Shown here: positions 1,981-43,600 of the stretch, piece after piece | Numbering within the stretch: the stretch's first letter is position 1 | Layout of the letters: the number at the start of each line of letters is the position of its first letter | Source: Fonticula alba ATCC 38817 | Lineage: Eukaryota; Protista; Nucleariida | Strand: one strand, 5' to 3' | DNA: 59,210 nt | Assembly (NCBI GenBank): GCA_000388065.2 | Contig: KB932203.1 | Position numbers and translations under genes: made by a program | The notes under the pieces: model-generated | The model's database searches: none | What the model saw: only the letters and a program-made list of their open reading frames with translations | Told to the model about the DNA's origin: nothing

Positions 1981-2742
1981 ATGACCGCCGGATCTTCTTC
2001 GACTAGCACCCCCTCGGCCCGCCTGTGCCCGGGCGTTGGTGAGCCCTGTCGCTTCTATGCCGACCCAGTGCGTGGCTACTGCTCCTCTTGCTCGAGGCTT
2101 GTGGCCACTTCGGCGCCGGCTGCTGGCGATGCGCCGGCTGCCGTCCCGCCCGAGGTGGCTGTCGCCAGCTCCCCACTGGCCGCGGCCGAAACCCCGGACA
2201 GCCCCGCCATTGTCACGGCCACCGACGAGGCCCCTGTGGACGGCGGATCACCGGGTCCCTCCCCGCTCAGCGATGTGACTCCCTCATCGCCGGGCGATGC
2301 GGCCGCCCTGGCGACGCCCTCCTCTCCCGAGCCGTGTGAGCGGTCAACGTCGCCGGGTCCGGCTCAGCCGGTCCCCAGCTCCTCCTCCTCGCCGATGCTG
2401 ACCCCGGCCGGGAGCATCCCGGTCCCCGGGTCGGCGGCTGTTCCTTCACCGGTGCTCAGTGCCTCCCCTTCGCTCGAGGGGTCGGCCTCCTCGCCGGCCG
2501 TGGCGGGGGGCTCCTCCTCCCCGCCGAAGTCCGCGGCCTCCGGTTCCGGGCCATCGCGCTGTGCCGTTTGCCGCAAGCGCCTCGGTCTGCTGGGGTTCAC
2601 CTGCCGGTGTTTGCGCACCCTCTGCGGCAGCCACCGCGCGGCCGATGCCCACCAGTGTGAGATTGACTACCGGGCACGCGCGCGCGCGCACCTCCAGGCC
2701 GCCAACCCGGCCGTTGTGGCGACCAAGATCGACAAGATCTAG
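1981..2742 (+). CDS. A20/AN1 zinc-finger protein (ZFAND5/6, plant SAP-like)
   Basis: N-terminal A20-like finger LCPGVGEPCRFYADPVRGYCSSC, Ser/Pro/Ala-rich linker, C-terminal AN1 finger RCAVCRKRLGLLGFTCRCLRTLCGSHRAADAHQCEIDY ending ANPAVVATKIDKI (family-typical tail). Single exon; the frame is open upstream into the N-gap, so the start is uncertain. Confidence 0.92.
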   Translation: MTAGSSSTSTPSARLCPGVGEPCRFYADPVRGYCSSCSRLVATSAPAAGDAPAAVPPEVAVASSPLAAAETPDSPAIVTATDEAPVDGGSPGPSPLSDVTPSSPGDAAALATPSSPEPCERSTSPGPAQPVPSSSSSPMLTPAGSIPVPGSAAVPSPVLSASPSLEGSASSPAVAGGSSSPPKSAASGSGPSRCAVCRKRLGLLGFTCRCLRTLCGSHRAADAHQCEIDYRARARAHLQAANPAVVATKIDKI

Positions 2743-4285
2743 GTGATCCGCGCCCGATGCGCGCGCGGGTGTGCCTTCCTGGCACGCATCCTGGCTCCGC
2801 AATGATTGCTGGTGCTGGTGCTGGTGCTGTCTGCCCCCCCCCCCCCCCGACCCTACCCCTCACCCCCCTCTCCTCCTTCAAGAGGGGAGTGGAGGGCCGC
2901 CGGTTGGAGGAGCACACAGGCAAAGATGCCCCTGGGCTTGTTGAACTCACAAGAAGGAAAGAGAGAGAGAGAGACAGAGAGCGCGCGCGCATGCGCCCCC
3001 CCCCCCCCGAAAGCGGGAGTGCCTGTGAGAAATGAGGAACATGGGCATGATGCAGGATGACAACGGCGCACAAGGAGGAGGAGTGGTGGAAGGTGGGAGA
3101 TTAAGATTAACCGCGGGCCCAGTTCAACTGCACTCTCTCCCTCTCTCGGGCGTGCATGTTTGGCTGCCCTCTGCACACCCTTCCCGGTGTCTTTCCCCTT
3201 CTCTCCTCCTCCTCCTCCTCCTCCTCCTTCTTCTTCTTCTTTCGTGTGCCCCCCATCCTCTTGCCCATTTCTTCCATGCGTCCTCCTTCTCTCTCTCTCT
3301 CTCTCTCCATCTCTCTCTCCTTTCCCTTCTCCCCATGCAGCTCTGCCTTCCTCCTGTGTTCCTCCCCCCTTCCGGTTTTCACACCTTGTCCTTGGAACCC
3401 ACTCTCCGGGTCTCCCCGCTTGCCGGTGTCATGCGCCTCCTCCTCCCTATCCAATGGGGGAGAGCGCGTGCGCCGCAGGGTGGGCGCGTATGACCTGCCG
3501 TCACGAGAGGCAGTGAGCGAGCGAGCGAGCTAGAGAGAGCGAGAGAAACAGCCAGCAAGAGATCCACCACCATGTCAAGACTCGGTGGTCTTCTTCTCGC
3601 TTTCTCTCGCTTTTCCTCCTCCCCCCGCCCTCCCCCTTCCCCTTCCCCTTCAGTCACACGCGCCTTCCCCCCTTTTTCGCTCGGCGTGCTCCCCCCTCGC
3701 CCCCTCCCCGAGCTTTGTATTTTAATATCCTCCCATCTCTCCTCTTCCATCGTTCCTCCCCTCCCCCCCTCTCCCCTGAGGCACTCGCGTATGCTGCACT
3801 TGCTGTGTGTGTGTGTGTGTCTGCGTGCACGTGCCTACTGTGTTGACCTCCTCAGAGCACGCGCCTTCTTTCCCTCGCCTCCAGCACTTGTGAGAGGTGG
3901 AGCCTATACATGCAACCATGCCTTCCCTCCCCCCTTCCCCTCTGTCTCTCTTTTTGTTTAAACCCACACAATGCCCGATGGGGCAAATGTTGTCCAGGCT
4001 AATACATTAAGAATCCCTCCTTGCCGTGGCCGCTGTTTTCTCCCTTCACCGTTTGCCTCTCCTACCTCCCCTGAAAAGTATTCCGCCGAAGAGAGGGGCG
4101 GGAGCGGGGGCGGCGGAGGCGCAAGCACAAGCGCTGGGATGTGGTGAAGACACACAGGGGTGCATGCATTTCAGGGTATTTGATTATTGCTGGTGCCTTC
4201 GGGGCCAGGCGAGGCAGATAGAAAGTGGAGAGCACCCGCCAGGGGGGAGTTCATCGGCGCTGTTCCCCTCCCTCCTTCCCTCCCT

Positions 4286-4328
<43 letters not shown>

Positions 4329-4372
4329 GCGCCTTTTCGCCTGTGGTCTACAGATGTAAGTGAGGTCCATGT

Positions 4373-6315
4373 CTACGATGCGAATGCTCGCTCGCGAGCT
4401 TGTTGAGGCCGGGGCCGCGCCGGTGCTGGTTGTTGTTGTTGTTGCTGCGGCTGTTGCTGCTGCGGCTGCTGCCGTTGTTGTTGATGATGTTGAGGCTGCT
4501 GCCGTTGTTGTTGATGATGTTGAGGCTGCTGCGGCCGTTGTTGCATGGGCGACGAGCCAGGCTGGAGAGTGGGAGCAGGCATAGAGCCGGGAATCAAGCG
4601 GGCATGGCCCGAAGTGGACGTGAGTGCCGCCGGTACACGCGCGGAAGATGCGACCACCCGCGAGCCTGAGCCGCGCGCCGGTGCGGCAGGGGCGCGCACA
4701 GATGGCGCGGCCGGACCGTGCACAGATGCGACGGGCGCCTGCCCAGCATGGACTGACACCTTGGCAGGCGGAGACGGCGTGCGAACGGGTCCGCCAGCCG
4801 GGGCACGAGTGCTTGTCGGCATGGGCCCCTCGAGGGCATCGAAAAAGTCCTCCTCCTCCTCCGACTCGAGGAGGGCCGCCAGCTCGGCTTCCAAATCAGC
4901 CGCCAGCTCGTCATCTGGCCAGGCATCCCCCGGGAGGGCCAACGATTGGGCTGCCTCCTCCCCTCGGAGGGAGAGATCCTGCAGTTGATCGACCAGGTCG
5001 TCGGCAGCGGAAAGAGCTCGATCTGCGCCCCCGGGGCCGAGCACCGAGCGAAGGACGGCCGAACTGTCCCGCAGGGCGGCAAAGCTGCTGCCCAAGTCCA
5101 CAGCTCCCAGGAGTTGCTGCCGGGAATTCAGTACATTCAGCCCGAGAGATCGGCACGCCTCGGCCCGCGAGAGGGCAGCCTGGCGCTGGCGCAGGGCCAT
5201 ACGCGCGGGTTGAAGCTGGCGCGCGCGCGAGCCTGGCCCGGCCAGGGCCCGGCGGGCCTCCTGCTCGAAGCAAGTGGCCAGGGCTTCGTGCACGCTGGCA
5301 CGCAGGGTCAGCCCGGCGTCCAGATCCTCCAAAATGGCCGCCGCCGTTTGGCTGCTCTGGTGCCGGAGGCGCTCGCGAGTCTCGGCGGTCGGCTGGTGGA
5401 GCACCGGCCCGGCATCCGGCGCATCGGGGCTGGCAAGGAAGGTCACCACCACGGCAGTTGTGGTGGGTGTATTGCGAGTGGTGGCGGCGGCCAATTCCAG
5501 GGTGACCAAGCCATCCCAGGCCAGCTGCAGCAAGCCCAAATCAAAGTCGAGCCGACGTCCGACGCAGCCCAGCGCCTTGGCGAGGCAGGGGAAAGAGCGA
5601 GAAGGAGGAGAAGCAGGCAGGGGGGAGGGGGATCAGTAAATGCGGATGGGGGCCCCTGGCCATCCTTCCCCGGCCCCCAGGGTGCCGGAGGAGGGAGGAC
5701 GATGAAGGGTGCCTGCCTCTTGCTGGGAGAGGGTGTCTTCATGGACGTACTCGGGCATATCGACAGTATGCCAGTCGCGCGGTCATGGTATGGCCGTCAG
5801 CTGCGAGGGCCGCCGGTAGTTGGGATGGATCAATGCCAAAAGCCGGGCGCCCGGCCTGCGACCGGGAAAGCACGGCCCTGGCAGCGGCCATGTCCCCCTG
5901 CCCCACATGGTAGGCATACCAATGTGCCTGGCAGATGGCATGGCCAAGGGCTCGGGCCGCCGAACGGCTGACGAGCATTGATCGAACGGGGGCCTTGTGG
6001 CCGGTGGTCCGGCCGGCAGCGGCCCGGCCGGCAGCGGCCTTCACGGCATCGTGAGCGCCAATCGGGCTCGACTGGTGGCCGAGCAGCCGGGCGAGAAGGG
6101 CCCCGGGCCATTGGAGCAGGGGACTCGACCCCCCGCCTTTGGCATGCTTGTGGTGATGGTCCGCGTCGCGCAGCAGGAAATCGGAGCTGGCCTGCGCCAC
6201 CTGGAGCAAGTATTCCGGCGGGATGAGCGATCCTTCGGCAACCAGTTCATCCTGGATGCCATCAATGGTCAGTGGACAGGTGCAGCGGGGAGACCATCCC
6301 TCCCGCCAGGTGGCC

Positions 6316-6362
<47 letters not shown>

Positions 6363-7158
6363 AAAAGGCAGCGAGCGCATATCACGAACCAGGACAACAG
6401 CCATGCCTAATGGCCGGGCTCCGGCATCGAGAAAGTATGCGGCCAAGGAGTCCGGTGCACCGGGGACCAAAAGTCGGCTGCCGAGGCTCGGAGGAGGGAG
6501 CCACAGGCCTCCGGCCGCTGAAAGGCCACCGGGGCCCGGGGCATGTGCCGAGGCCACGCCCCCGGGGCCAGTGGCTTCCGGCTCGCCAGGTGCCACGGCC
6601 GATGGCCATAGCCCCGGATCGAGGTCCGCATCGCTGCGAGCCAAGAGCTCGGTGGCCACCTGGGCACATGCGGCCTGGGCGTCCTCACCAAGGGCGCCCT
6701 CGAAGCCGGCCTGCAAGAGATCCGGCCGAGTGAGGGAGACCGCACGCCAGAAAGCCGCTCGACGTCCGGGGGCGGGGGTGGACTTGGTTGGGGGCACAGC
6801 CGGCCGGAGCAGGCCGTCTGCCGGAGGCGCCTCGGAAAAGACCCCAGCCAGGGCCAGGTGCTGGATGGCGCCCCGCCAAAAGGCCAAGCGACTGTCCCAG
6901 CCCTGAATCGGTTGTGTGTGTGTGTGTGTGTGTGTGTGAGCAAAGTGGGTCGCACGAGGGGGAGCCCTTTCGAGGTCATGGGCCAGCACGTACGGTGGGG
7001 TTGATGGACCGATCGGCCGGGAACTTGGAATACAGGCCACGCAGACGCTCACGGTCGGTCACATCCCGGGGGTAGACCTCCTTCAGGAGTTGCAAGGCGG
7101 TGATGCGTGGCTCCCGTGCTGGGGTCCGGGATGCCGGGCCGCCCAGATCGTCGGGCAT
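4373..7158 (-). CDS. CHMP7: CHMP7/Chm7 (ESCRT-II/III hybrid; winged-helix region plus Snf7 domain)
   Basis: Exons 7158-6994, 6902-6389, 6251-5751, 5575-4373 join in frame over GT-AG introns. DRERLRGLYSKFPADRSINPT|GWDSRLAFWRGAI matches the CHMP7 N-terminus (EERMSFLFSAF..REVNSTDWDSKMGFW); GARPLGMAVVL|DELVAEGSLIP matches VPLGLATVL. Helical Snf7 domain in the last exon, then a Pro/Ala and Gln/His tail. Confidence 0.85.
6317..6360. repeat. (GT)22 microsatellite in CHMP7 intron 2
   Basis: Read directly. Confidence 0.95.
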
Positions 7159-7797: not shown

Positions 7798-7871
7798 TGT
7801 CCGAACCAGGACTCGAACCTGGGACATTCTGTGTGTTAGACAGATATGATAACCATCTACATCATTCGGAC
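7798..7871 (-). tRNA. tRNA-Val(AAC), intronless
   Basis: Reverse complement GTCCGAA TG ATGTAGATGGTTATCAT A TCTGT CTAACAC ACAGA ATGTC CCAGG TTCGAGT CCTGG TTCGGAC A: 7-bp acceptor stem, 5-bp anticodon stem with AAC, T-loop TTCGAGT. Confidence 0.97.
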
Positions 7872-8848
7872 TGGTAATATGATCGCCTGGCGTGATATAT
7901 GATCACCCTCACGTGCATGCCTCCGGGCCTCGTCCCACCGGGCCGTGCCAGACGCGGGGCCGGTTTTTTCTCTTCTCCCTCCTGCCTGTTCCCCCTCCTC
8001 CGCGGTGGCTGCCTGGTTCATCGTTGCCCCTGGCATGCGAGTGTGTTGACCGACCGGCAGCAAAGCCCCAGACACCGCGGCAAGTCCCGGCGGCTGGGCC
8101 AAAGGGCGAGATGGACACCGGAGGCGGCAGCATTCTATTCAAAGGGGTCAAAAGGGAGGAAGGGCAAGGGGGAGCCACCATGTGGCCAGTGCCCGGTCCC
8201 AGGGGGTGCGAAGCTCCTGTTCACCGCAAAAGCAGCGGGGGCTGGTCGACTGGTGGACCACAGAGGCCTCTAGGCTTGGCAAGCAGCCAAAGTGGAAGAT
8301 GTGAAGAGGAGAAGAGGGGGGGGGGGGAGAGAGAGAGGCCGGGGAGACAGCCAAACGGCCCGAGTCCGCGGCGCGGGCGAGGGCCGGCTCGGACGCANNN
8401 NNNNNNNNNNNNNNNNNNNNNNNNNNNNNNNNNNNNNNNNNNNNNNNNNNNNNNNNNNNNNNNNNNNNNNNNNNNNNNNNNNNNNNNNNNNNNNNNNNNN
8501 NNNNNNNNNNNNNNNNNNNNNNNNNNNNNNNNNNNNNNNNNNNNNNNNNNNNNNNNNNNNNNNNNNNNNNNNNNNNNNNNNNNNNNNNNNNNNNNNNNNN
8601 NNNNNNNNNNNNNNNNNNNNNNNNNNNNNNNNNNNNNNNNNNNNNNNNNNNNNNNNNNNNNNNNNNNNNNNNNNNNNNNNNNNNNNNNNNNNNNNNNNNN
8701 NNNNNNNNNNNNNNNNNNNNNNNNNNNNNNNNNNNNNNNNNGGGGGGGACGGAGCCAGCGGCCCCGGGCGGGGTGAGGGAGTTCCCGAGGGATGCAACGG
8801 GCGAGCGCGAGGGAGGAAAATGCACACAGAGGGGAGTCCTGCTCGTAC

Positions 8849-10296
8849 ATGGTTGCGGTCTTGGCGCTCAAACGGCGGGGTCCCAATCAGAAACTCATAG
8901 ACCAGCACGCCGAGGGACCATTCATCGACGCTGGCGTCGTAGGACTTGCGCTCGGCCATCTCCGGCGGCAGGTAGTCCAGTGTCCCGCAGAAGGTGTCGC
9001 GCCGGCCGCTGGCGGTCCCACCGGCCTGGGAAGTCCCAGTAGCCCCGGGCGCCGGAGGCGAGTGCACGCTCCAGCCGAAGTCCGCCAGCTTGACATCCCC
9101 TCGAACATCGACCAGGATGTTTTCCGGCTTCAAGTCCCGGTGAATAACATGGCACGAGCGAAGATACGCCAGGGCCGAGGCAATCTGGTAGATGTAGAGG
9201 GCAGCCTGCGGCTCGGCAAAGCGCCCGGCCGCCCGAAGGAGCTGGAACATCTGCCCCTGGGAGGCATATTCCAGGATCAGGTACACGCGCCGGCTGTCAA
9301 AGAAGTTCCCATACAGGCGCAGGACATGCCGGTGACGGATGTTCGATTGGATTTCAATCTCTCGGCACAGCTGCTGCTCCATGTTGTACTGGCGGATCTC
9401 CGACTTGTACAGGACCTTGATGGCCACCACATAGCGCGTGGACTTCTCCAGGGCCAGGAAGACCACGCCATAGCGCCCGGCCCCGAGGCGCTGGCCGAAG
9501 AAGAAGTCGTCCTTGGTCCAGACGCGTGGTGCCGCGGCCAGCGGGTTGGCCCCGGCGGAGGGCAGGGCATCGGCTGGCAGGGGCGGCCGCGAGGCCGGCG
9601 TCACGCCTGTCGTACTTGTGCCACTGGCCGTGGACGTAGAGCCGGCGGCGGAGCCGGTGGCGGCCGCGGTGCTGGTGGCGGCCGCGGTGCTGGTGGCAGC
9701 CGCAGCAGGCCCGGCGGCGGGGGCACTGATGGCAGTGGCAGGAACAGGGCCAGAGGCAGCGGCGGCATGGGCGGCCGGGCGCGCGGCGGTGGCCGGCTCG
9801 GTGGAAAGAGTGCGCGCGGTGGCGGAAAGAGCGGCAGTGGGCATGGCGGCCGCTGGGCGAGTGGTCTGCGCAACCGAGGCCTTGGCTGCGACAGGGCCTG
9901 GGGTTGCCTGGGAGCCAGATCGGCGGGGGGNNNNNNNNNNGGCCTGGGGTTGCCTGGGAGCCAGATCGGCGGGGGGCCACCCTGCCGGCCGAGGCCACCG
10001 TCGAGGCGGTCAGTGTGGAGGAAGGGGTGTTGACAAACAGACCGGACGGAGGGGAAGAAGAGGACGGAAGGGGAAAAAGCCAGGAAAAGCAAGGAGGACG
10101 GGGAGGACGTGACCGTGGTCGGAGGGGCATTTTCATCGGCAGCCGGGGCCGACGCGGCGGCATTGGCCGCAGGCGTGGCGGCCTTTGGCGTGCTTCGTGA
10201 GGAAAGAAAAGCCGGCTTGGTGAAGAATCGACGTGGGGTCCGAAAAACCGAGGAGCTCTTCGGTGTCCCGGCCGAGTCGGGGACCGAGCTGGACAT
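8849..10296 (-). CDS. AURK: Aurora-family Ser/Thr kinase (C-terminal end lost in gap 8398-8741)
   Basis: WTKDDFFFGQRLGAGRYGVVFLA, VAIKVL, QLCREIEIQSNIRH, IHRDLKPENIL, LADFGWSVH and RRDTFCGTLDYLPPEM are Aurora hallmarks. Probable ATG at 10296 (MSSSVPDS); the N-terminal region is split by an intron and a 10-N gap; donor GTACGA at 8848. Confidence 0.93.
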
Positions 10297-21117: not shown

Positions 21118-24100
21118 GGGGGCGGGGGCGAGAAGAGAGGAAGAGCCGGGGATGGGACGTACAACCAGCGTGCAGGCATACTCATGACGAACCGCATAGC
21201 GCACCTCGCCATCGAGGTAGGGATGGTCCGGCGCAAGGCGGAAGCCACGGGGACCGGAGACACGCGGGGGGACGGTGGTGCCAGCTGCAGCGGCATCGGC
21301 CTCCTCCAGCGGCCGGGTGGTCAGCACGGAGCTGAGAGTGCCATCCGGCAGGACAACAGACGTCCACTCGGTGGGAGCACAGAGGGCCGCCACCTGGGTG
21401 GCGCGATCGCCGTAGCTCCGAAGCAGGTGGTTGGCAACCTTCAACGGGGAGTCAGGGGATGGGGGAAGCAGCCACATCGTTAGCGCTGGCAGCCCGGTCA
21501 CAGGAGGGCAAGAGGCAATGGCAACCAGGATGAAGGCAGCGGCCACGGCAGTGCCGCGTGAAGACGGTACCTCGGCATCAAAGCCATACTCGGTGGTCAG
21601 CGACGAGAGGATGGCCGCCTCGTTGTACTTCTCCGCGCCGAAGAGCTTGATCTTGTCGGTGATGGCCTCCGGGGTATCAGGGGTGAGCTGGGTGTCGGAG
21701 GGGGAGGGGGGNNNNNNNNNNNNNNNNNNNNNNNNNNNNNNNNNNNNNNNNNNNNNNNNNNNNNNNNNNNNNNNNNNNNNNNNNNNNNNNNNNNNNNNNN
21801 NNNNNNNNNNNNNNNNNNNNNNNNNNNNNNNNNNNNNNNNNNNNNNNNNNNNNNNNNNNNNNNNNNNNNNNNNNNNNNNNNNNNNNNNNNNNNNNNNNNN
21901 NNNNNNNNNNNNNNNNNNNNNNNNNNNNNNNNNNNNNNNNNNNNNNNNNNNNNNNNNNNNNNNNNNNNNNNNNNNNNNNNNNNNNNNNNNNNNNNNNNNN
22001 NNNNNNNNNNNNNNNNNNNNNNNNNNNNNNNNNNNNNNNNNNNNNNNNNNNNNGGGGGGGAAAGGAGAGGGAGAGAATACGGCAGGTCAGTTAGGGAGAA
22101 GCACACATGCCCATGCCGCCAAGGGAGTGGTGCATGGCAAGAGCGGAGGAGGGGATAAAGACGCACCCCGAACACGCGGATGGCGCTGTCAAGAGCATCC
22201 TTGGCCATGATGCGGAAGGTGGTCAGCTTGCCGCCGGACACGGTGATCAGGCTGCTGGGGCTGACATGGACCACATGGGTCCGGGCAATGGTCGAGGTGT
22301 TGGTGCCAGACTGCTCGTCGGCCGTCTGACTGTAGAAGGCCGGGTTGTTGGGGTCGCGCACGAGCGGCCGCACGCCGGCCCAGATGGACCGAACGTCACT
22401 GCGGCTGACCTGGAGGTCCTTGCGCAGGTAGGGCCGCACGGCGTTCAGCACCCACTCGACGTCGGCCTCGCGGGCGATCAGGCCGCCGCTCGGGAGGGGG
22501 CCGGCCTCGGAGCCGGCGGCCGCCAGGTCAGCCGGGCCGACGGGCTCCACCACATTGCCGGAGTTTTCGGCCGCCGCACGCGGCAGCGGGGTGTCGGTGG
22601 TCCCGCACAGAACCGACCCGGCCCACGGGAGGACGAAGACCACGCGGTTGTCGCTGGTGGCCGGGTCCAGCAGACCGAAGGTCGAGTGCTCGAACAAGTG
22701 CGCCGGCAGGACCACATGGATCCCCTGGCTGGGGACCAAGATCGGGCGAGAGGCCGGATCATCCAGCCGACGAATGGTATCGGAAAAGGGCCCAGTGGCA
22801 TTGATGACCCCCTTGGCCTGGACGGTGAAGGTCTGCCCGGTGAGGCGATCGCGCACCTCGACACCGGTGGTGCGCATGCGCGGGGCGGCGGTGTCGGCGG
22901 CCGCACTGGCCGCCGCATCGCCGGACCCCTGGATAACCAGGGACCCGGCATCCGAGTGCCGGGTCGAGTCGGCGGCCGCCGGGTCAGTGGTCCCGGCAGC
23001 GGCGCCCTCCGGCACCTGGACCAGACCCACCACCTCGGTGTGGTTGACCACCGTGGCGCCGTAGCTGGCGGCCGTGAGAACCGTGCTGGTGGTCAGCCGG
23101 GCGTCATCATTGACGCCATCATGGTACACGATGCCGGCGCGCAGGCCCTCGGCCGAGAGGCTGGGGAAGGCCTCCAGGGTGCGCGTCGGCGAGAGGATGC
23201 GCGTGAAGGGCATCCGATCGCCGGAGGTCAGCCGGGCCAGGAGGTTGTAGCACACGGCCCCGGCATAGTAGTAGACGGCATCGAAGAAGCTGTACACCGG
23301 CAGGAGGATGGCCTGGGGGTGGACAATGTGCGGGGCGATCTCCAGCAGGGTCTTCCGCTCGGCCAGCGCCTCGCGAACCAGGTTGTACTGCTTGGAGTCC
23401 AGGTCGAAGACCGCCCGCTCCAGGTACCGGACCCCGCCGTGGATGAGCTTCGTCGACCGGGAGGAGGTGCCGGCTGCGAAGTCGTCCCGCTCGATGAGGG
23501 CCACCTTCAAGCCGCGCGACGCCGCGTCCAGGGCGATCCCGCTGCCGGTGATGCCGGCGCCGATGACGATCAAGTCATACTCCTCGTCGGCCCTGTGAGT
23601 GGGCGTGGAGCCGGAGTGGGGAGTTGGGGAGGAGGGGGAGCAAAACGATGAGCCAGGGCCCAGTGTGTGTGTGTGTGTGTGAGGGAGAGAGTGAGTGGGT
23701 ACTGGTGTGGGAGGTGGGCACAGGAAAGAGGAGGGCAAAATACTGAGGCCAGGACGCGTGTGTGTGTGTGTGTGTGTGCGTGTGTGTGTGCATGTAAAAG
23801 GGTGGGATGAGAAGCAGTGGGGGGGGGGGGGAGGCGTACCGCAGGCGCTCCATGTGCTCGGCGCGAGTGGGCAACGTCTTGAGCCGGGCGGGGCCAATGC
23901 GGCGACGTTCCTCCATGCGCTCAAGGCGCTCCTGCGAACGCTTCTCGCGTCGGGCCTGGCGCTCCTCCGGGGTGGATCGGATGCGACGGAACTCCTCCGG
24001 GGCGTCGGCCTCCGAAGTGGGGACGGAAGTCGGAGCAGGAGCCGCATCACAGTGAGCAGCCGTCAGGAAGGACGGACGGGTGAAGCTGCCCTCCGACGAG

Positions 24101-31152: not shown

Positions 31153-32293
31153 GTCTCCACACAGGGCCCCGCACGGCCCGCAACTTTCCGCGCCCATCCT
31201 CGCCACCGACTGGGCCAACCACCATAGACTGGCATGTCCAGGCACATGGTCCCCCCCCCCCCCCCCCCCCCGGCGCCCCACGGGAACCGGTGAGATTGTG
31301 GACCGGGGGGGAAGATAACCAGCCTCCAGAGGGACCGCCCTGATCCCGACCCCCGGCCCCGATTCCGATGTCAAGTACACTCGCACACCCAGCATGGGCC
31401 GCCCCACGGCCGCCCCACGGCCGGCACCGGAAGTTCAACACCCCGCCCTGGCACGAGGGTCCGACAGATTGTCCACCCACCCTGCCCTCCGGGGCTTGCG
31501 GTCCCCTCTATAACCAGCCCTCCTCACCCTGGTGGGCAGCCCGCGACAACCAGGCGGCGGGAGCGCCAGAGCCAGAATATTTAAGGTCTCGTTCTCCTTT
31601 AGGTATTGGTAATGGCATTCCCTTTCACGACGGTTTGATACATCAGATCTCGCTCTTCTCGTGTTGCATCTGACTTTCGAGATTCAGGCTGGTGCGTGGG
31701 TGGGGACCTCACCAAGCCGGAGCGCAGCGGACCCGATGTCCCCCTCCCGGCCCCGGGCGCATGAACCCTAAAAGGCTGGGAGGAGCGAATGCGGGCTGTG
31801 CGGTAAAGACGGGGAAGATACACTTGCGAAAGCGGCGTCTTTGGCCACTCCACTTTTCTGGACAGACTGAACTGACAAGGTCGCCCCGGGCGGGGAGGGT
31901 CTTGGTCGGGGGGGGGGGGAGGGGGTCGGGCGCACGCCACAATCCGATGCTGGCCTCCAGTTCGGATCAGAACACCCCTCTCACCACCGCCCCCCGGCTG
32001 TCCTTCCAGGCATCCCACGACCACGGGTCTCTGGCTCTCATTCGGCCGAGCCCACGACCCGGCAGATGTGGCTTGGTCGGGGAATACCACGGATAGTCCT
32101 GTGGTCCCCCCCCCCACCACTCCTCTTGACGCGAGACACTACCCGATGAAAAAGCGCTCACCTGGCACGGCCTGGCCTCGCCGACGCTCGCCATCCGCCT
32201 CCGAACTTCCGTGAAACTCCTTTGCTCCCCTCTTTGTTGTATGCCCCTGCCCCCTTTCATCCGCGCTGCCTCCCTCCCCCTCCCTCGCTCTTT

Positions 32294-32341
<48 letters not shown>

Positions 32342-32747
32342 CCCGTCCTTCCTCCCTCCTTCTTCTTTTTTGGCCTATCGTTATCCGCAGTAGCGCCCAT
32401 GTGCATATGCACCCTGCGCCGGCTGTCCACGGAGCCCGGGTGTTTCGCTGCTGCTCTCGCCTCTTGCGCTGCGGGCAACGCCGGCACCGCCTTCGCCAGC
32501 GCGCGCCGCTCCCAGCCCCCCCTCCCCCCGCCCTCCGCGAGAGAGCGAGACACACACGCCTTGTCGCCGACACCGGGCGCCTCTCCCCACATTCGGGCAC
32601 ACGCCTGCCGGCCATTTCCTGACACCCTCGTCCTCTCCCTGCTTCCCTCCTCCTCCTCCTCCTCCTCTTCCCCGCTGCTTCTCGCCGCCACCGCCTCCCC
32701 CTCCCTCGCAATCAGTCATTCTCGGGGTTCCGCTCGAACAGCCCAAC

Positions 32748-35336
32748 ATGCTTTCTCTCAGGGGCTCTCTCTCCTCGGGGGCGTGCCTGCAGGCGGTGCG
32801 CCAGGCGACAGCCGTCTCCACCACCGGCAGCGCTACCGCCACTGCCACTGTTCGCTTTTAGTACGCGCGCACACACGCACTATTCCTCCTCATGTTGCCG
32901 CGCTCCATGTTTCCTTTGCCCTCCAATTCACCGGGCCGGGCTCCCGAGCAGACGCCCCTCACTCGCTCACCCGCTTGCCCGCCCTCATCCTCAGCGCCAC
33001 CAAGAAGAAGTACACCCCCTCGCTGCAGTTCGGTGGCCGGCCCCTGGCCATGGCCGATAACACCGTCTCCACGGTCAGCTCCATCGGCGCCACCGTCTTC
33101 AAGGTGGTCGACGGCACCGAAACCAGCCGCTTTGCCGGGCCTCTGAAGCACACCGACCCGGACCATGCCCGCCTGACGGCCGAGGCTGCGGCCAAGGGTG
33201 CCCAGGCGGCCGGCACCGGGCGCACCCGCGCCCAGGTCCGGCGCGCGCTCAGCATCGGCCGTGAGGATTTCGCCCTCCAGCGCCTGCACAGCGAACAGGC
33301 GGCCGGTCTCTTTGAGAACCCGCCAGCTCCCATGAGCCAGCAGACCTCCAACCGCCAGATGGCCGAGCTCAACAACCTGGCCACCCAGCCGCCGGCCGTG
33401 CGCGACCAGGCCAACCCCCCGCCGCGCATTGTTTCCTCCGCCGAGAAGCCCACCTTCTCCAAGATCCGCCGCGCCCAGATCAACCTCTCCGGCTATCACC
33501 ACGAGCTGGTGGACACCTTTGCCGTGTTCATCCGCCAGACGGCCATGATCATGAAGATCCCCGTGTCCGGGCTCATCCGCATGCCCACCCAGCGCAAGCT
33601 CTTCTCCGTCATCCGGAGCCCCTTCAAGTACAATCGCTCGCACGCGCAGTTCGGCATGACCACCCACAAGCGGTACGTTTTGCCCTCCTGCCGCCCGATA
33701 TCGGGGCCCAGCCACCTTTCCTGCTGCCACCGACCAGGGCGGGGCAACGCAAACATGATGGTGTGCCCTGCTGGCGGCGGGACAAGAGTCTGATCTGGCG
33801 GGGCGGGTAGCACTCCTGGTCTTCTCTCTCTCTCTCCCTCTCTCCCTCTCCGGGTTCTGACTTTCCGCCGCGCCCTGCCTCTCACAATGGGACTCCCCCT
33901 CCCGCCATAGCCTCATCCAGGTGCACAACTGCACTGACGAGGTCCTGAACCACTTCCTCCGGTATCTGTACGTCCGCCTGCCGGCCGGTATCGGTATGCG
34001 CATGCGCACCTTCGACTATGAGCCCCTGCCGGCCGAGACCTACAAGCTGTTGAAGGCCCAGCCGACCTTCGTCAAGCCCCTGTCGGCCGATGCCCTGCAG
34101 AAGCTGTCGGCCGAGGTGTATCACCTGCCGCTGGAGCGTCGCCCGGAGGGCTCCGGGCTGGATGCTGACGAGCTGGCCGAGATGATGGCCTCCATGCCGA
34201 GCCCCGCCAGCCGCCGGCCGGACCACTCCCTGCATCGCCTGCATCCCTTCCTCAACAACTACGTCGGCCGGTCCGACCGCATGCACGCCATGGAGCAGCT
34301 GGACGCCGCCCTGGCCGAGACCGAGTACACCCGGGCGGACTTCATTCGCGATCCCGCCCCCGCTCGCCATGACTCGACCCACCGGATGCCCGCGCACCAG
34401 GCTGCCCCCGGAGCCGCCGGGCCCCGTGCCAGCATGAAGCGCACCACCGATGTGACTGGGGCCGCCTCCTCGGTGACCCCGGCCTCGGTCGGCCGCCTGG
34501 CCCCGCTGTCGGTGCATCAGCAGAAGCTGCGCGCCGCCGCGGCGGACGCCCGGCCCGGGCGCACGCGCGCCGGTCTCACCGATGCCCTGGACCGCAGCCA
34601 GCTGACCGAGCCCAATGCCGCGCTGGACTTCCTTCGGAGCAACCCGCCCGACCCCCGGGCCATGGCCGCCGCCGCGGCGGTCCTGCCCCCCACCTTCGCC
34701 CCGGCTGCCCCGGTGCACCACAAGTACACCCTGCCGCGCCTGCCCCCTGGCGCCGGGCCAATCATCGAGCGTGGGAAGGTCCTCGCCGAGATGGAGGTCC
34801 TCCGGACGGACACTCCCCAGCGTGTGAGCCCGGTCCTGCGTCTCCTGACGAAGGATTTCGTCGGGTTCATGGACTTTGTGGATGATGCCCTGAACCTGGA
34901 CCCGGAGGCGGCCAAGACCGTCAGCGGCACCATTGCCCATGTCGATGGGCATATCTATGCCGATACCCCCTTCACGCCGCCCGGGCAGCGGACCAAGTAC
35001 CGCTTCTCCGTGGCCGATTACACCAAGAAGACTGGCCGCGGTCGGGCCAGTGCCGACGGCGCGTCGGACGAGCAGGACGCCCATGCCGCCCTTCTCCAGA
35101 TCACTCTCGCGGCCAGCAGCCAGAAGGACGCCACTCCCCGCACCGAGGAGGACATTCAGCGCGACATGGCCAACATGGCCATCAGCATCGACGATGTGGA
35201 TGCCCTGCTCAGCGGCGGTGGCAAGGCCCTGGCCCAGCGCTCCATCTCGGCCTCCATCAAGGCCGACGCCATGCCCACCTACTCGGATATCCAGCCGAAC
35301 AAGGAGAACCCGCCGCACAGCTTCTACAAGTGGTAA
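32748..35336 (+). CDS. MRPS10: Mitochondrial ribosomal protein uS10m with long N- and C-terminal extensions (~738 aa)
   Basis: Exons 32748-32860, 32995-33672, 33911-35336 join in frame. Presequence-like MLSLRGSLSSGACLQAVRQ..VRFYAT; S10 core QINLSGYHHELVD..MPTQRKLFSVIRSPF..QFGMTTHKR|LIQV. Confidence 0.85.
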
Positions 35337-38693: not shown

Positions 38694-39200
38694 AACTTCG
38701 GGAGATGAAGGGGGAGGGAGGGAGGGGGGGGGGGGAATGCGCCCGCCCCTGTGGAGTCCGGGGCAAGGGGCACTCGCCTGGGAGGCACGGGCCGGCCTCC
38801 TTCCGGGGGCAGACACCGGGCCCGGGACCACCCGCGGGCCCTGCCAATATCCTCCGGGGGCGGGCGGCGAGCGAAGATATCCGACATGCCGGCCCCAGGC
38901 CACCCGGAACAGGAAGAGGGCGACCGGCCCCCCCCCCCGGCGAGGCGATCTCTTTCGGCCAGGTACCTCTCCGCCTGCCTACCCGCGCATGGGCAGATCT
39001 CGAGAAGTTCCTCCCCCTCCCCCTCTTCGCCCTTCCTTTTTGCTTCTCCCCCGAGATGTACCTCCCGCCTCTTGTTTGCCTGCGCCCTGCTCGCTGTCGT
39101 TTCCTCGCCCCCTCCCCCTCCCCCTCCCCCCGCCTGCAGTGGCTCCGGCACAGCACTAATTCCCCGTCCTTCCGCCCGTCCGTCAGACCCGCGCCGCGCA

Positions 39201-40225
39201 ATGTCCGAATACGACATTGACAGCATCATTTTCAAGCTCCTTTCGGGTGCGTTCTCCTCTCTCCTCTTTGCCACCGCTGCCAAGCTGTGCACACGCACAC
39301 GCAGCCCATTGCCTTGCCGCCTTGCACGCGCTCACACACGCTTCCTTTCATCAGTCCGGGGCAACCGCCCGGGCATGGATGTCCCCATGACCGAGGGCGA
39401 AATCCGCTGGCTGTGTGCCAAGGCCCGTGACATCTTCATCAGCCAGCCTTCGCTCCTGGAGCTTGAGGCTCCGGTCAAGGTCTGCGGTGCGCCGTTTCGT
39501 CATTCTCTGCCCCACCCGGCGCCCCCCTCCGCCGCACGCAACCTGATTTTGACCTCCGAACATCCCGCACGCCATGTGTCCGATACTGGTGCACGCATGC
39601 GCGTACGCTCCTTTCACCCCCCACCCCGCCAGGCGACATTCACGGCCAGTACTACGATCTGCTGCGGCTGTTCGAGTACGGCGGCTTCCCGCCCGAGGCC
39701 AACTACCTCTTCCTCGGGGACTACGTCGACCGTGGTCGCCAGTCCATGGAGACCATCTGCCTGCTGTTGGCCTTCAAGATCCGCTACCCGGAGAACTTCT
39801 TCCTCTTGCGCGGGAACCACGAGTGTGCCAGCATCAACCGTATCTACGGTTTCTACGACGAATGTGCGTGGCACATTGCTCCCTCCTCGTGTGGCACTTG
39901 TCCCTTTATCCAACTCATGTACATTCGATCGCACTGCTTGCTCACTCTCTCTCTCTCTCTCTCTCTCCCCTCCCCCCCCCCCACACACACACGCAAATAT
40001 TTATCCATCCATCCATCGATGTGCGTGTGGATGCGCACGCGCACAGGCAAGCGTCGGTACAGCACCAAGCTCTGGAAGATTTTCACCGACTGCTTCAACT
40101 GCTTGCCGATTGCGGCCGTCATTGAGGAGAAGATCTTGGCCATGCATGGCGGCCTGTCACCGGACCTCCAGTCCATGGAGCAAATCCGCAACATCAACCG
40201 CCCGACTGATGTCCCGGACAGTGGT
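39201..40225 (+). CDS. PPP1C: Protein phosphatase 1 catalytic subunit (C-terminal third missing at the 10-N gap)
   Basis: [15 protein letters not shown]|[64 protein letters not shown]|[28 protein letters not shown] are near-identical to PP1. Confidence 0.95.
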
Positions 40226-40359
40226 GCGCTTGCCTTCCGGCTACACGCCCCCCTTGCCATCTTCGCTGCCTCTTCGCCCGCTCCTTCCCCGCCCTTCGGG
40301 GTCTCGGCGTCCTGCGCACTCTTGCCACTTCCCCCTGGTCCCCCTTCGAAACCTCCCCC

Positions 40360-40369
40360 NNNNNNNNNN
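40360..40369. other. 10-N assembly gap hiding the PP1 3' exons
   Basis: PP1 homology stops at RPTDVPDSG and does not resume after the gap. Confidence 0.8.
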
Positions 40370-40490
40370 CCCCTCCCTCCCATATAGAACCCCATGCCCA
40401 GCGAGGGTGCAAGGGACAACCATCGGTGGGGAATGAACCAACCTCATAAATATGTATGTATGTGAGAGGGGCTGGGGAGTGTATATTTAC

Positions 40491-40662: not shown

Positions 40663-43600
40663 TTAGCGACGCAGGCGGAGACCGGTCATGCCGAAGCTGG
40701 TGTCATCGTCCGGGGTGAGATCACCGAACTCCCACATGCCGACCTAAATGTGTTTGTGCGTGCGTGCGTGCGTGCGTGCGAGAGATAATGGGGATACAGC
40801 CGGTGAGAGGGAGGGCGGGCGGGCAGGCGGACAGGCGGACACAAGCGACCAGTAAGGGCAAGGACAATGGGCAAATACATGCAGAGGGGAGAGCAACGAA
40901 AGGCGGAGGAAAGAGACGGTCACACGCACGCGATTGGCCTTGGCCTTCTTCTCGGCGGCCAGCACAGCAGCCAGCCAGATGGGCACCGACGCACCGGCAG
41001 CCGGGGGCTGGGACTCGGCAAAGGCGAAGCCCATGTCCACCAGCTTGGCGTTGATGGAGTCGGTCATGATCACCTCGCCCTCCTTGAGGAAGGCCAGAAC
41101 CGGCTGGGCACCGGTGGTGGGATCACGCAGACCGATGGTGTACACGCGCAGGGTGGCATTGGACACCAACCCGGCCAGGGCATTGATGGCGTCATTGTAG
41201 TAGCTGTCGCCATCGCCAAGGGCCGCATCAATGGCCGTCTGAATGTCATGCCCGGCCAGGGCGCGCTTGATGGCATCGCGAGCGGTGGCAGACGGCTCCG
41301 CAAGACGCAGCCCGGCCAGGGTATACTCGGCGGCCAGCGGCGGACGCGCCGCCAGGCTGGACGACAGGGCCCGGACAGCCGAAACCGGCAGACCAGTCTC
41401 CACCCAACCATAGTCCACGAGAATGGCATCCACCGTGGACCCGGCCACCCGGGCAATGCGCCCGCGGAACCAGCCGCCCTCGGACTCGAGGTAAATGGCA
41501 AAGAGAGCACCACGCGCGCGCAGAGCCGCCACCTCCGGCGGACTGGCGATGGCCTCGGCCTCGGCCTGGAGGAGGGTCGAAAGCTGGGCCAGCTCGCCGG
41601 AGGTGTGCACCGACTCCAGCTGCGCCATGAAGGTGCCCGTGTGCGGGCGGACATCAGTCACATAAATGACACGCTGCTCGGTCTTGGCCGCGGCCGCGGC
41701 CTCGGCCTCCTTGCGCTCGGCCTCCCGGCGGAGCTCCTCCTCCCGGCGAATCCAAATACCAAGCTTCTGCTGACGGGCCGCCTCCTCCGCGCGCTTCAGC
41801 TCCGCGGCATTGGGGGTATACTCCAGCGAGTAGGCATGGGTGTTGGCCAGGCCGCGCTCCAGCAGGCTGACCGCCAGGTCGGCCTGAGTCTTGTCATCAC
41901 CGGCCTCATAGTCCTGGAAGGAGAGGCTACCGGTGAAGGTGCCCGTGCGATCGACCCCGCTGATGCTCACCTCGACCGAGCGATTTTGCACCTGGGCCGC
42001 GGTGAAAGCGAGCGCCTCGGCGCCGAAGGGCTCCTCCTTGCTCGGATCGCCGGAGCCAGCCCCGCCGGCCGGGGCACGAGGGCATTGGACCCCCTGCAGG
42101 GAGAAGGTCAGCAGGACCGAGTCCCCTGGGAGGATGATCTTCATCCGGCTGCCGGAGACAACGTGCTCAACAATGCCACGATGACGGGCACCAGGCGCCC
42201 GAGTCAGGAAGGGCAGGAACTGCTTGGCCTTGTTGACCGAGGCGCTGATGTCATTCAGGCCGCCCGCGGCCGGCGGCTTGCCCGAGTGAATGCCCACCTT
42301 CTTGTTCTTGGCCTGAATCTCGGCCGCGATCAGGGCATCATAGTTCAGAGGGCGGGGCATGTCATGGCGGATCTTCTGCACGGTGGCCATGCCGGACTCG
42401 ATGAGCTTGACGGCAAGGTCACTGTGGTATAGATGAGACACAGAGAGAGGGAGAGAGGGGGGAGAGNNNNNNNNNNNNNNNNNNNNNNNNNNNNNNNNNN
42501 NNNNNNNNNNNNNNNNNNNNNNGAGAGAGAGAGAGAGAGGAAGGGAGGGAGAGAGAGACAGAGAGAGAGGGAGAGATAAGTGAGTCAGAAATCTTGGAAC
42601 GGAGGAGGGGGGAGATGCCCTTGGCGGCCACCAAGGTCCGAGGTACGTACAGGTTGCCAATTCGAATGGACACACACGGGCGCTCATCGAAGTCGTCCAC
42701 GCCGGGGCGGCTGTACTCGTGGGTGACGGTCACTGGCTTCTTGGTGTCCATCAGGAGCTCACGAGTGAACTCGCGCGAGCGAGCCACCCACGGGGCCTCG
42801 GCCTCGTTCTTCAGGTTCGGGGCAAAGACACCGGCCAGCTGGATGCGGGTCTCGCGCTCGAAGCCGGTCTCAGCCGAGTACATGGCATACATGCCGGCGC
42901 TGACGACACGGCACACGCGAGCCGCAGTGTAGGCCTTGCCCTGAGTGGGGCCGCTGGCAGCGGCTGAGGAGGACGTCGCACCAGCACCACCCACCACCTT
43001 GGCGGCGGTCGCCGCGGGCGGAACATAATCCCGGAACACGCGCAGGCGCTTGCTACGCGCCTGGTTGAAGGCACCAAGCAGGGGAGTCACCCCGCCGGCG
43101 GCCGCCGACACGGAGGCCATGGTATGATCATTGGGCAGGACGTAGCCGCCCTGGGCCAGGGCCACGGCAAAGGAAGCCCCAGCACGATTAGTAAGGGACC
43201 CGGTAAACCAGAGGCTCTGAGGGTTGAGATCCTCCAGGATGACGGTGACATTCTGCTGGAGGAGACGCGACTCGGCGAAGCTGTGAGCCTCGGCGGCCAC
43301 AGGATCATCGGACTCGGCGCGAGAGGACCCGGCCCGCACGCCGGCCAGCTGAAGGTTGATCGCCTGACGCGAGGGGAGCAGAGTGACCAGGTAGGAGGAG
43401 CCGTTGCGCACACGCTCGACGACAGCTGCCAAGGAGGGAAGCTGGTGTGAGTGGATTGGCAAAGGTGGGGCAAAGACACAGGGACAGTGCGATCGGAAAC
43501 ATGGGCATGCCCGTACCCTCCAGGGTCTTGCCCTTGTTCTTGGCTAGGAAGGCCTCGGCGGGCTTGGCATCGGTGAACAGCGGCGGGTTGGGCGAGAGAG

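What the first reader, a model, noticed from the sequence alone, without database searches (positions are those of the whole stretch)
4829..4867. CHMP7 carries a near-perfect FFAT (VAP-binding) motif
Seen: right after the ESCRT-III helical core the protein reads LLESEEEEDFFDALEG. Known: FFAT motifs (EFFDAxE with an upstream acidic tract) bind the MSP domain of ER VAP/Scs2 proteins. I know of no FFAT motif in human CHMP7 or yeast Chm7, which are recruited by LEM2/Heh1 and lipid binding. Inference: this lineage may tether its nuclear-envelope ESCRT-III initiator to the ER/NE through VAP, which would be a distinct recruitment route.
Basis: partly seen in the sequence, partly recalled or inferred. 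Interest (0 to 1): 0.7.

Follow-up and report, generated by a model that had tools for sequence, protein, structure and literature searches.

The report
Perfect FFAT motif in Fonticula CHMP7
A very divergent CHMP7-like nuclear-envelope ESCRT-III protein of the amoeba Fonticula alba carries a textbook-perfect FFAT peptide, the kind that docks proteins onto the ER protein VAP, just after its helical core. This link is unreported and easy to test, but here it rests on one sequence with no relatives to compare.

Summary
Window 4829..4867 (minus strand) encodes ESEEEE-DFFDALE, residues 630-642 of Fonticula alba hypothetical protein H696_02347 (XP_009494523.1). By the published FFAT scoring table it has 0 suboptimal elements, the best possible score. 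Nothing else in the six frames of the window scores 2.5 or better, and no shuffle reaches 2.

The contig is not human. My four-exon gene model and the deposited model agree through residue 666, so both keep the motif.

CHMP7 identity is probable but not proven here:
- A precomputed Pfam hit to WHD_CHMP7_1st is on record, but my own hmmscan did not reproduce it.
- The Snf7 match is far below threshold.
- A low-confidence fold shows an ESCRT-III-like helix order.

The protein has no detectable homologue in 1.84 billion representative proteins. The decisive test, conservation in nucleariid relatives, could therefore not be run. VAP binding is inferred, not shown.

No searchable paper links CHMP7 with FFAT.

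The best reading is a real VAP-docking motif that anchors this soluble CHMP7 on the ER and outer nuclear membrane. That would add to LEM2-type activation rather than replace it. The rivals are a lineage-specific accident, a helix-6-like regulatory segment, and an overlapping Atg8-binding (LIR) motif.

The parts
4829..4849 (-). FFAT core DFFDALE (P0001 residues 636-642)
   Evidence: Direct reading. All six scored positions are optimal by the published table.
4850..4867 (-). Acidic flank ESEEEE (residues 630-635). EEEE is encoded by (GAG)4, and Ser631 sits in an S-x-x-E context.
   Evidence: Flank charge is 5.5, above the 4 needed for no penalty. It aligns with the acidic end of the Snf7 profile, positions about 150-157 of 171.
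4868..4912 (-). Predicted helix 5 of the ESCRT-III-like domain (about residues 615-629, DDELAADLEAELAAL)
   Evidence: AF2 single-sequence model, helix 186-200 of P0001:430-680, low confidence. Covered by the weak Snf7 and Vps60 alignments.
4868..5386 (-). ESCRT-III-like helical core, about residues 457-629: predicted helices 457-503, 507-551, 554-572, 574-605 and 615-629
   Evidence: pLDDT 52. Snf7 PF03357 at 10.8-11.9 bits, below threshold. The best Foldseek hit is the Asgard ESCRT-IIIB filament at E=1.4, not significant.
4376..5575 (-). Exon 4 (400 codons if unspliced; stop at 4375..4373): end of the N-terminal module, ESCRT-III-like core, FFAT, then a Pro/Ser/Ala-rich and Gln-rich tail
   Evidence: The deposited model removes a further intron (donor at 4757) and ends at about 4348; both models keep the motif.
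5751..6251 (-). Exon 3 (167 codons)
   Evidence: Identical to the deposited protein.
6390..6902 (-). Exon 2 (171 codons), starting GWDSRLAFWRGAI
6994..7158 (-). Exon 1 (55 codons, ATG at 7158). With exon 2 it holds the region credited to PF25880 WHD_CHMP7_1st in the precomputed table.

Best explanation
The gene is the highly divergent CHMP7/Chm7 orthologue of Fonticula alba. It has an ESCRT-II-like N-terminal module fused to an ESCRT-III core. Residues 630-642 are a functional, conventional FFAT motif. The proposed mechanism follows.

1. The protein has no transmembrane or strongly hydrophobic segment, so it is soluble or peripheral.
2. The acidic tract makes the first electrostatic contact with the basic face of the MSP domain of the ER tail-anchored protein VAP/Scs2. 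The core DFFDALE then lies extended across the MSP binding groove.
3. [quoted passage not shown] There it is concentrated in two dimensions and poised to meet an inner-membrane LEM2/Heh1-type activator at nuclear-envelope holes.
4. The motif abuts helix 5, part of the autoinhibitory C-terminal region of ESCRT-III proteins. VAP binding and the closed/open switch may therefore influence each other.

Shown: sequence, frame, optimal score and position after the helical core. Inferred: CHMP7 orthology, cytosolic exposure, disorder of the segment, existence of a Fonticula VAP, binding, and every functional consequence.
For: The motif scores 0 suboptimal elements by the published table. In human only 4 motifs score 0, and 12 of the 15 motifs with 1 or fewer were already known FFAT motifs. 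E1 to D is listed as a natural conservative substitution. Chance expectation is about 1e-5 per protein, and none appeared in shuffles. The motif is followed by Gly-Pro and a Pro/Ser/Thr-rich tail, and AF2 confidence is below 50 on both sides. There is no hydrophobic segment; the maximum Kyte-Doolittle mean over 15 aa is 1.49. VAPs and their 11 FFAT-contact residues are reported as conserved in all eukaryotes (PMC3261905). Human CHMP7 is described as ER-localised (PMC8324300). VAPB already has a nuclear-envelope-reassembly client through FFAT motifs, ELYS (PMC11094025). CHMP7 identity rests on the precomputed unmarked PF25880 hit, the sub-threshold Snf7 and Vps60 matches at the right place and the helix order.
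Against: No binding data exist. Conservation among orthologues is one of the four published criteria for a likely VAP interactor, and it could not be tested because no homologue was retrievable. The AF2 model puts residues 633-641 in a short helix; a helical motif cannot extend across the VAP site, although that prediction has pLDDT about 45. The acidic tract is inherited ESCRT-III helix-5 acidity and a (GAG)4 run, so only FFDA.E is new. The protein evolves so fast that lineage-specific accidents are plausible. CHMP7 membership was not reproduced with the local Pfam scan. No VAP gene of Fonticula was examined.
Confidence: 0.42

Rival explanations
1. Lineage-specific accident. The ancestral acidic end of helix 5, lengthened by a (GAG)n run, happened to acquire FFDA.E in a very fast-evolving protein. 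The peptide may bind VAP in a test tube but has no selected role.
For: The protein is so divergent that phmmer against 1.84 billion representatives finds only itself. The acidic tract aligns to the acidic end of the Snf7 profile and EEEE is a perfect (GAG)4 in a microsatellite-rich locus. There is no evidence of conservation.
Against: Composition-based expectation is about 1e-5 per protein. The two Phe are the only adjacent pair among 14 Phe. A score of 0 is rare even in a whole human proteome. GAG is 78% of Glu codons, so (GAG)4 alone is unremarkable.
Confidence: 0.27
2. Helix-6-like regulatory segment. The short amphipathic stretch EEEDFFDAL is the counterpart of CHMP7 helix 6, the C-terminal regulatory, NES and MIM1-like element. 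It packs its two Phe and Leu against the core, or binds exportin or an MIT domain, and is not a VAP ligand.
For: AF2 places a separate short helix at 633-641, just after helix 5. In other species helices 5 and 6 of CHMP7 carry NESs, and deleting helix 6 opens the protein (PMC8324300). I saw no other helix-6-like element in the tail of either gene model (sequence reading).
Against: The helix prediction has pLDDT about 45 from a single sequence. The segment has only three hydrophobic residues and fits neither the type-1 NES nor the MIM1 spacing as I read it (inference, not computed). No alignment to helix 6 of other CHMP7 proteins could be made.
Confidence: 0.13
3. Atg8-interacting (LIR/AIM) or related acidic-aromatic motif. 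F638-D-A-L641 fits [W/F/Y]xx[L/I/V] with an acidic run upstream, so the segment could recruit Atg8 instead of, or as well as, VAP.
For: A pattern scan of P0001 finds FDAL at 638 preceded by EEDF. It is the most acidic of the four [WFY]xx[LIV] sites in the protein.
Against: The LIR core is short and very common. Every FFAT-specific position (F2, D4, A5, E7) is also optimal, which an LIR does not require. No evidence for Atg8 binding by CHMP7 was gathered here.
Confidence: 0.08
4. The host protein is not a CHMP7 orthologue but an unrelated coiled-coil protein, so the nuclear-envelope context of the reading is wrong. The motif could still be an FFAT.
For: Local hmmscan finds no CHMP7 winged-helix family even at E of 10 or less. 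Snf7 is far below threshold. Foldseek is not significant. The N-terminal model is uninformative, with pLDDT 38. There are no homologues.
Against: The precomputed table lists PF25880 WHD_CHMP7_1st unmarked, meaning E of 1e-5 or less; about 98 in 100 such hits pass Pfam's threshold. The only weak profile and PDB matches are ESCRT-III (Snf7, Vps60) and sit in the C-terminal third, as in CHMP7. The helix order hairpin-a3-a4-a5 fits, and the top two Foldseek rows are ESCRT-III.
Confidence: 0.1

Closest known systems
Canonical FFAT motifs (EFFDA-E in an acidic tract) of OSBP/ORPs, CERT, Nir/rdgB, Opi1, Rab3GAP1, rabphilin-11
   Same: Same seven elements: acidic flank plus D/E-F-F-D-A-x-E. It scores 0 suboptimal elements by the authors' own table. 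It lies next to a structured domain in an apparently flexible, acidic region of a cytoplasmic multidomain protein.
   Different: The host is an ESCRT-III-type protein rather than a lipid-transfer or lipid-sensing protein. Position 1 is D rather than E, a listed conservative variant. In the part of the paper's Table S1 that I saw, the DFFDA-E row appeared empty. There are no binding or conservation data.
Human CHMP7 / yeast Chm7 / fission-yeast Cmp7 (ESCRT-II/III hybrid that starts nuclear-envelope ESCRT-III assembly)
   Same: An N-terminal module credited to WHD_CHMP7_1st followed by a C-terminal ESCRT-III-like helical core with an acidic helix 5. Human CHMP7 is ER-localised and is activated by the LEM2 winged helix.
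   Different: It is about 740-790 aa with long low-complexity insertions and tail. It is so divergent that no relative is detectable by sequence. It carries an optimal FFAT where other species have a linker and helix 6 (NES2/MIM1-like). No paper in the library holds both 'CHMP7' and 'FFAT'; the one 'Chm7'+'FFAT' paper was not read.
ELYS-VAPB (VAPB bound to phosphorylated ELYS at decondensing chromosomes in mitosis; PMC11094025)
   Same: A VAP client acting in post-mitotic nuclear-envelope and pore reassembly, which shows VAP can take part in that process.
   Different: ELYS is a nucleoporin and its binding depends on mitotic phosphorylation. The motif here is conventional and needs no phosphorylation.
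CDIP1 (binds ESCRT-I and VAPA/B; PMC7865452) and protrudin-type ER-endosome contact proteins
   Same: Precedents for physical links between the ESCRT pathway and VAP.
   Different: In those cases an adaptor carries the VAP-binding element. Here it would sit on an ESCRT-III-type subunit itself.
LIR/AIM motifs ([W/F/Y]xx[L/I/V] after acidic residues)
   Same: FDAL preceded by EEED fits the core pattern.
   Different: All FFAT-specific positions are also optimal. The LIR reading is pattern-level only.

Membership tests
FFAT motif (VAP/Scs2 MSP-domain ligand) | Core positions 1-5 and 7 match [DE]-F-[FY]-[DE]-[AC]-x-[DE] | tested here: met
   DFFDALE has no penalty at any position by Table S2A of PMC3261905.
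FFAT motif (VAP/Scs2 MSP-domain ligand) | Acidic upstream flank (charge value of 4 or more over six residues) | tested here: met
   ESEEEE gives 5.5. The 'local +/-' over 6+2 residues is -5.
FFAT motif (VAP/Scs2 MSP-domain ligand) | Not in a helix or folded domain, so the motif can extend across the MSP site | tested here: inconclusive
   The single-sequence AF2 model draws a short helix at 633-641 with pLDDT about 45, with sub-50 segments on both sides and Gly-Pro straight after. That is too weak to decide.
FFAT motif (VAP/Scs2 MSP-domain ligand) | Host protein is cytoplasmic | not testable with these tools
   Inferred from CHMP7 biology (PMC8324300) and the absence of any hydrophobic segment or signal-like N-terminus.
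FFAT motif (VAP/Scs2 MSP-domain ligand) | Critical residues conserved among orthologues more than their neighbours | not testable with these tools
   No orthologue was retrievable. phmmer over 1.84e9 representatives, three word-indexed searches and a metagenome scan returned only the protein itself or nothing.
FFAT motif (VAP/Scs2 MSP-domain ligand) | Binds the VAP MSP domain, with binding lost on FF-to-AA | not testable with these tools
   This needs an experiment. No Fonticula VAP sequence was available for co-folding.
CHMP7/Chm7 | N-terminal CHMP7-type winged-helix domain (Pfam PF25880 WHD_CHMP7_1st) | tested here: inconclusive
   The precomputed unmarked hit is on record. Local hmmscan of the whole protein and six N-terminal pieces gave no hit at E of 10 or less. 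The AF2 N-terminal model is useless, with pLDDT 38.
CHMP7/Chm7 | C-terminal Snf7/ESCRT-III domain (Pfam PF03357 above gathering score) | tested here: not met
   The best score is 11.9 bits against a cut-off of 27.3, and only profile positions 105-157 match. Weaker support comes from the Vps60 helix 4-5 match at E=2, an ESCRT-III-like helix order and a top Foldseek hit to ESCRT-IIIB at E=1.4. The curated threshold fails, but the resemblance is in the right place.
CHMP7/Chm7 | Binds and is activated by the LEM2/Heh1 winged-helix (MSC) domain, and acts at the nuclear envelope | not testable with these tools
   Known for human and yeast proteins (PMC11123513). Nothing can be said for Fonticula here.
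CHMP7/Chm7 | NES-bearing helices 5 and 6 in the C-terminal regulatory region | not tested
   A Leu-rich acidic helix 5 is present at 615-629. I saw no clear helix 6 in either tail model (sequence reading only).

The most novel reading that the evidence does not exclude
In Fonticula, and perhaps in nucleariids generally, VAP is the membrane receptor of the nuclear-envelope ESCRT-III initiator. The FFAT next to helix 5 replaces the membrane-anchoring function of the N-terminal domain seen in animals. Because it abuts the autoinhibitory C-terminal region, VAP binding would be coupled directly to opening or closing of CHMP7. VAP would then be a regulator of nuclear-envelope sealing rather than a passive tether.
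Probability: 0.12. Interest if true: 0.65.

Novelty: new member of a known kind. Interest (0 to 1): 0.4.

Why it matters
How CHMP7 is kept on the ER yet prevented from polymerising until it meets LEM2 is an active question in nuclear-envelope repair. It also bears on CHMP7 mislocalisation in neurodegeneration. A natural CHMP7 with an optimal VAP-docking peptide would show that evolution can solve the ER-anchoring step with an off-the-shelf short linear motif. It would add an ESCRT-III-type subunit to the list of VAP clients. It would also give a simple handle, FF-to-AA, for separating membrane anchoring from activation. The value is limited for now: there is one sequence from one little-studied organism, no conservation or binding data, and the prediction follows directly from a well-known motif definition.

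Tried and rejected
**Homologue searches**
- The word-indexed search with the whole last exon found nothing; the Gln-rich tail probably took the words.
- Repeats on residues 1-660 and 15-135 found only the protein itself.
- A full phmmer of residues 394-657 against 1.84 billion representatives found only itself.
- A JGI metagenome scan with six peptide patterns, including EEEEDFFD, gave 570 pattern matches, none a relative.
- Orthologue alignment, the key test, was therefore impossible.

**Family and structure tests**
- Pfam on single exons and on pieces gave only sub-threshold Snf7.
- PDB sequence searches gave Vps60 at E=2 for the C-terminal part and nothing for the N-terminal part.
- AF2 without an alignment gave pLDDT 52 for the C-terminal part, used only for helix order, and pLDDT 38 for the N-terminal part, which I discarded.
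- Foldseek against the PDB was not significant.

**Artefact and splicing checks**
- A wrong-frame artefact in a GC-rich genome is rejected. Long ORFs do exist on the opposite strand, but codon-position GC and the deposited model support the frame used.
- Splicing-out of the motif is unlikely. The only donor-like sites resembling this gene's introns are at 5064, which would delete helices 4-5, and at 4786 and 4757, both downstream of the motif. RNA-seq was not available.

**Other readings**
- I considered clathrin-box, FxDxF and MIM1 readings of the segment by eye and rejected them as not fitting. These are inferences, not computed.
- In the one Chm7+Scs2 paper I opened, the top-ranked of 14, Scs2 is used only as a topology reporter.

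Full report
**Source of the window**

The window is a GC-rich (about 65%) eukaryotic contig with (CA)n and (CT)n microsatellites. Exact look-up of the encoded protein identifies it as Fonticula alba, assembly GCA_000388065.2, scaffold KB932203.1. The gene is H696_02347, protein XP_009494523.1 / KCV71400.1, annotated 'hypothetical protein'. It is not a human contig, so the operators' restriction on human sequence does not apply. No toxin, effector or virus gene is involved.

**The observation**

On the minus strand, 4867..4829 reads GAG TCG GAG GAG GAG GAG GAC TTT TTC GAT GCC CTC GAG, which is ESEEEE-DFFDALE. The context is ...DDELAADLEAELAALLESEEEEDFFDALEGPMPTSTR.... The finding's coordinates span exactly the 13 residues that the published FFAT scoring scheme evaluates.

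**Gene model**

I derived a four-exon model from the sequence:
- Exons are 7158..6994, 6902..6390, 6251..5751 and 5575..4376, all phase 0.
- Donors are GTACGT, GTTCGT and GTACGT; acceptors are CAG, CAG and AAG.

The model is identical to the deposited 736-aa protein (P0001) through residue 666. The deposited model then removes one more intron (donor GTCAGT at 4757) and reads the tail in another frame. Both models keep the motif, at residues 630-642. Codon-position GC (0.78/0.53/0.76 for the structured part of exon 4) supports the frame. That matters because long chance ORFs exist on the opposite strand of this GC-rich DNA. Donor-like sites resembling this gene's introns do not offer a plausible way to splice out the motif alone. 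RNA-seq was not available.

**Is it more than chance?**

I used Table S2A of Mikitova & Levine 2012 (PMC3261905, supplement read).
- The flank charge value is 5.5, where 4 or more is optimal.
- D1, F2, F3, D4, A5 and E7 are all in the no-penalty class, so the score is 0 suboptimal elements.
- The same paper counts only 4 human motifs at score 0 and 15 at 1 or fewer, 12 of which were already known FFAT motifs. It lists E1 to D among natural conservative substitutions.
- In all six frames of the 59 kb window no other 13-mer scores 2.5 or better, and none of 100 shuffles reached 2.
- The strict pattern never occurred in 200 shuffles.
- From the protein's own composition (F 1.9%) the expectation is about 1e-5 per protein.
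- The two Phe are the only adjacent pair in the protein.

One caveat applies. The acidic tract is not independent evidence. It aligns with the acidic end of helix 5 of the Snf7 profile, and its EEEE is a (GAG)4 run (GAG is 78% of Glu codons). The real novelty is therefore FFDA.E.

**Is the host CHMP7?**

For:
- The collection's precomputed Pfam table lists PF25880 WHD_CHMP7_1st for this protein without a 'weak' or 'faint' mark.
- The only profile and PDB similarities, though sub-threshold, are ESCRT-III and sit in the C-terminal third. Snf7 PF03357 scores 10.8-11.9 bits against a 27.3 cut-off, matching profile positions 105-157 to residues 583-636. Vps60 helices 4-5 match at E=2.
- A single-sequence AF2 model of residues 430-680 (pLDDT 52) gives a long hairpin (457-503, 507-551), then helices at 554-572, 574-605 and 615-629. 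That is the ESCRT-III order.
- The top two Foldseek rows are an Asgard ESCRT-IIIB filament, but at E of 1.4 or more, so not significant.

Against or unresolved:
- My own hmmscan of the whole protein and of N-terminal pieces gave no CHMP7 winged-helix hit at E of 10 or less.
- The N-terminal AF2 model is uninformative, with pLDDT 38.
- No homologue of any kind was found.

I take CHMP7 orthology as probable, about 0.85-0.9. By my reading and memory of CHMP7 sequences, local strings such as GWDSRLAFW, LLQLAWDGLVTLE...VVVTF and DDLVDQLQDL resemble CHMP7 landmarks. That is a lead, not a test.

**What the motif most likely does**

The protein has no transmembrane or strongly hydrophobic segment. Human CHMP7 is described as an ER-localised ESCRT-II/III hybrid that is activated by the inner-membrane protein LEM2 and kept out of the nucleus by NESs in helices 5 and 6 (PMC8324300; PMC11123513). 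VAPs and their FFAT-contact residues are reported as conserved in all eukaryotes.

The most economical reading is that residues 630-642 dock the protein onto the MSP domain of the Fonticula VAP. [quoted passage not shown] It would supply or reinforce the ER-anchoring step upstream of LEM2-type activation, rather than a route that bypasses LEM2.

VAPB already has a nuclear-envelope-reassembly client, ELYS (PMC11094025), and ESCRT-VAP links through adaptors exist (CDIP1, PMC7865452). Because the motif abuts helix 5, VAP binding could also interact with the closed/open switch. That last point is speculation.

**Rivals**

- (a) A lineage-specific accident in a very fast-evolving, microsatellite-rich gene.
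- (b) A helix-6-like regulatory or NES segment. AF2 draws a short, low-confidence helix over 633-641, and a helical motif cannot bind VAP.
- (c) An overlapping LIR, FDAL after EEED.
- (d) The host is not CHMP7.

Of the four published criteria for a likely VAP interactor, only the score criterion was tested and met. Cytoplasmic location is inferred, non-helicity is inconclusive, and orthologue conservation is untestable here.

**Novelty and verdict**

- No paper in the searchable library contains both 'CHMP7' and 'FFAT'.
- 'Chm7'+'FFAT' gives one paper, which I did not open. Each term occurs once in it, and its title and abstract concern SUMOylation at the inner nuclear membrane.
- 'Fonticula'+'CHMP7' gives none.
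- The supplements of the 2012 FFAT survey contain no CHMP, Snf7 or ESCRT entry.

The combination therefore appears unreported. It is a new candidate member of a well-known motif class in a known protein family. It is hypothesis-generating and cheaply testable, but it rests on one sequence. Interest is 0.4.

Noticed in passing
window 4376..7158 (-), protein P0001: The CHMP7-like protein is extraordinarily divergent. phmmer of residues 394-657 against 1.84 billion representative proteins returns only itself, not even other Snf7-family proteins at E of 0.001 or less. It carries long Ala/Gly/Pro-rich insertions, roughly residues 140-225 and 270-330.
   Followed up: partly
window 4348..4760 (-): The two tail models disagree. 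The deposited model removes a 196-nt intron (donor GTCAGT at 4757) and reads an Asn/Ser-rich frame ending HGPHLHL. Unspliced reading gives a Pro/Ala-rich then Gln/His-rich tail ending at 4373. Codon-position GC of the tail (0.82/0.60/0.58 unspliced) fits neither model cleanly. A 30-nt tandem repeat (2.7 copies, 4464..4543) lies inside it.
   Followed up: partly
P0001 residues 1-260 (window about 6380..7158 -): The precomputed Pfam table credits PF25880 WHD_CHMP7_1st at an unmarked level, but local hmmscan gives no hit even at E of 10 or less for the whole protein or six sub-pieces. A difference in model version (PF25880.2) or in filters is likely but unresolved.
   Followed up: partly
window 6913..6938 and 6317..6361: The first two introns of the gene each consist largely of a perfect (CA)n/(TG)n microsatellite, 13 and 22.5 copies. 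(CT)n and (CCCT)n arrays lie just downstream of the gene at 4266..4323 and 3203..3321.
   Followed up: no
window 7798..7871 (-): tRNA-Val (anticodon AAC) lies about 640 bp upstream of the CHMP7-like start codon, on the same strand.
   Followed up: no
window 1981..2742 (+): The neighbouring gene has a C-terminal AN1-type zinc finger (PF01428, E=1.9e-6) after a long Ser/Pro/Ala-rich region. It converges on the CHMP7-like gene.
   Followed up: no
window 40744..42687 (-), 21597..24050 (-), 8270..9844 (-), 38751..40436 (+), 32222..33793 (+): Other recognisable genes in the window are SNase+Tudor (Tudor-SN-like), an FAD-dependent oxidoreductase (DAO), a protein kinase, a PP1-type phosphatase N-terminal domain and a ribosomal protein S10/S20e fragment. 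These were ORF-level Pfam hits only; exon structures were not worked out.
   Followed up: no
window 4624..5505 (+) and 4946..5971 (+): Long open frames (293 and 341 aa) run antisense to the CHMP7-like exon 4. They are by-products of the 65% GC content, not genes, and a reminder that ORF length alone means little in this genome.
   Followed up: yes
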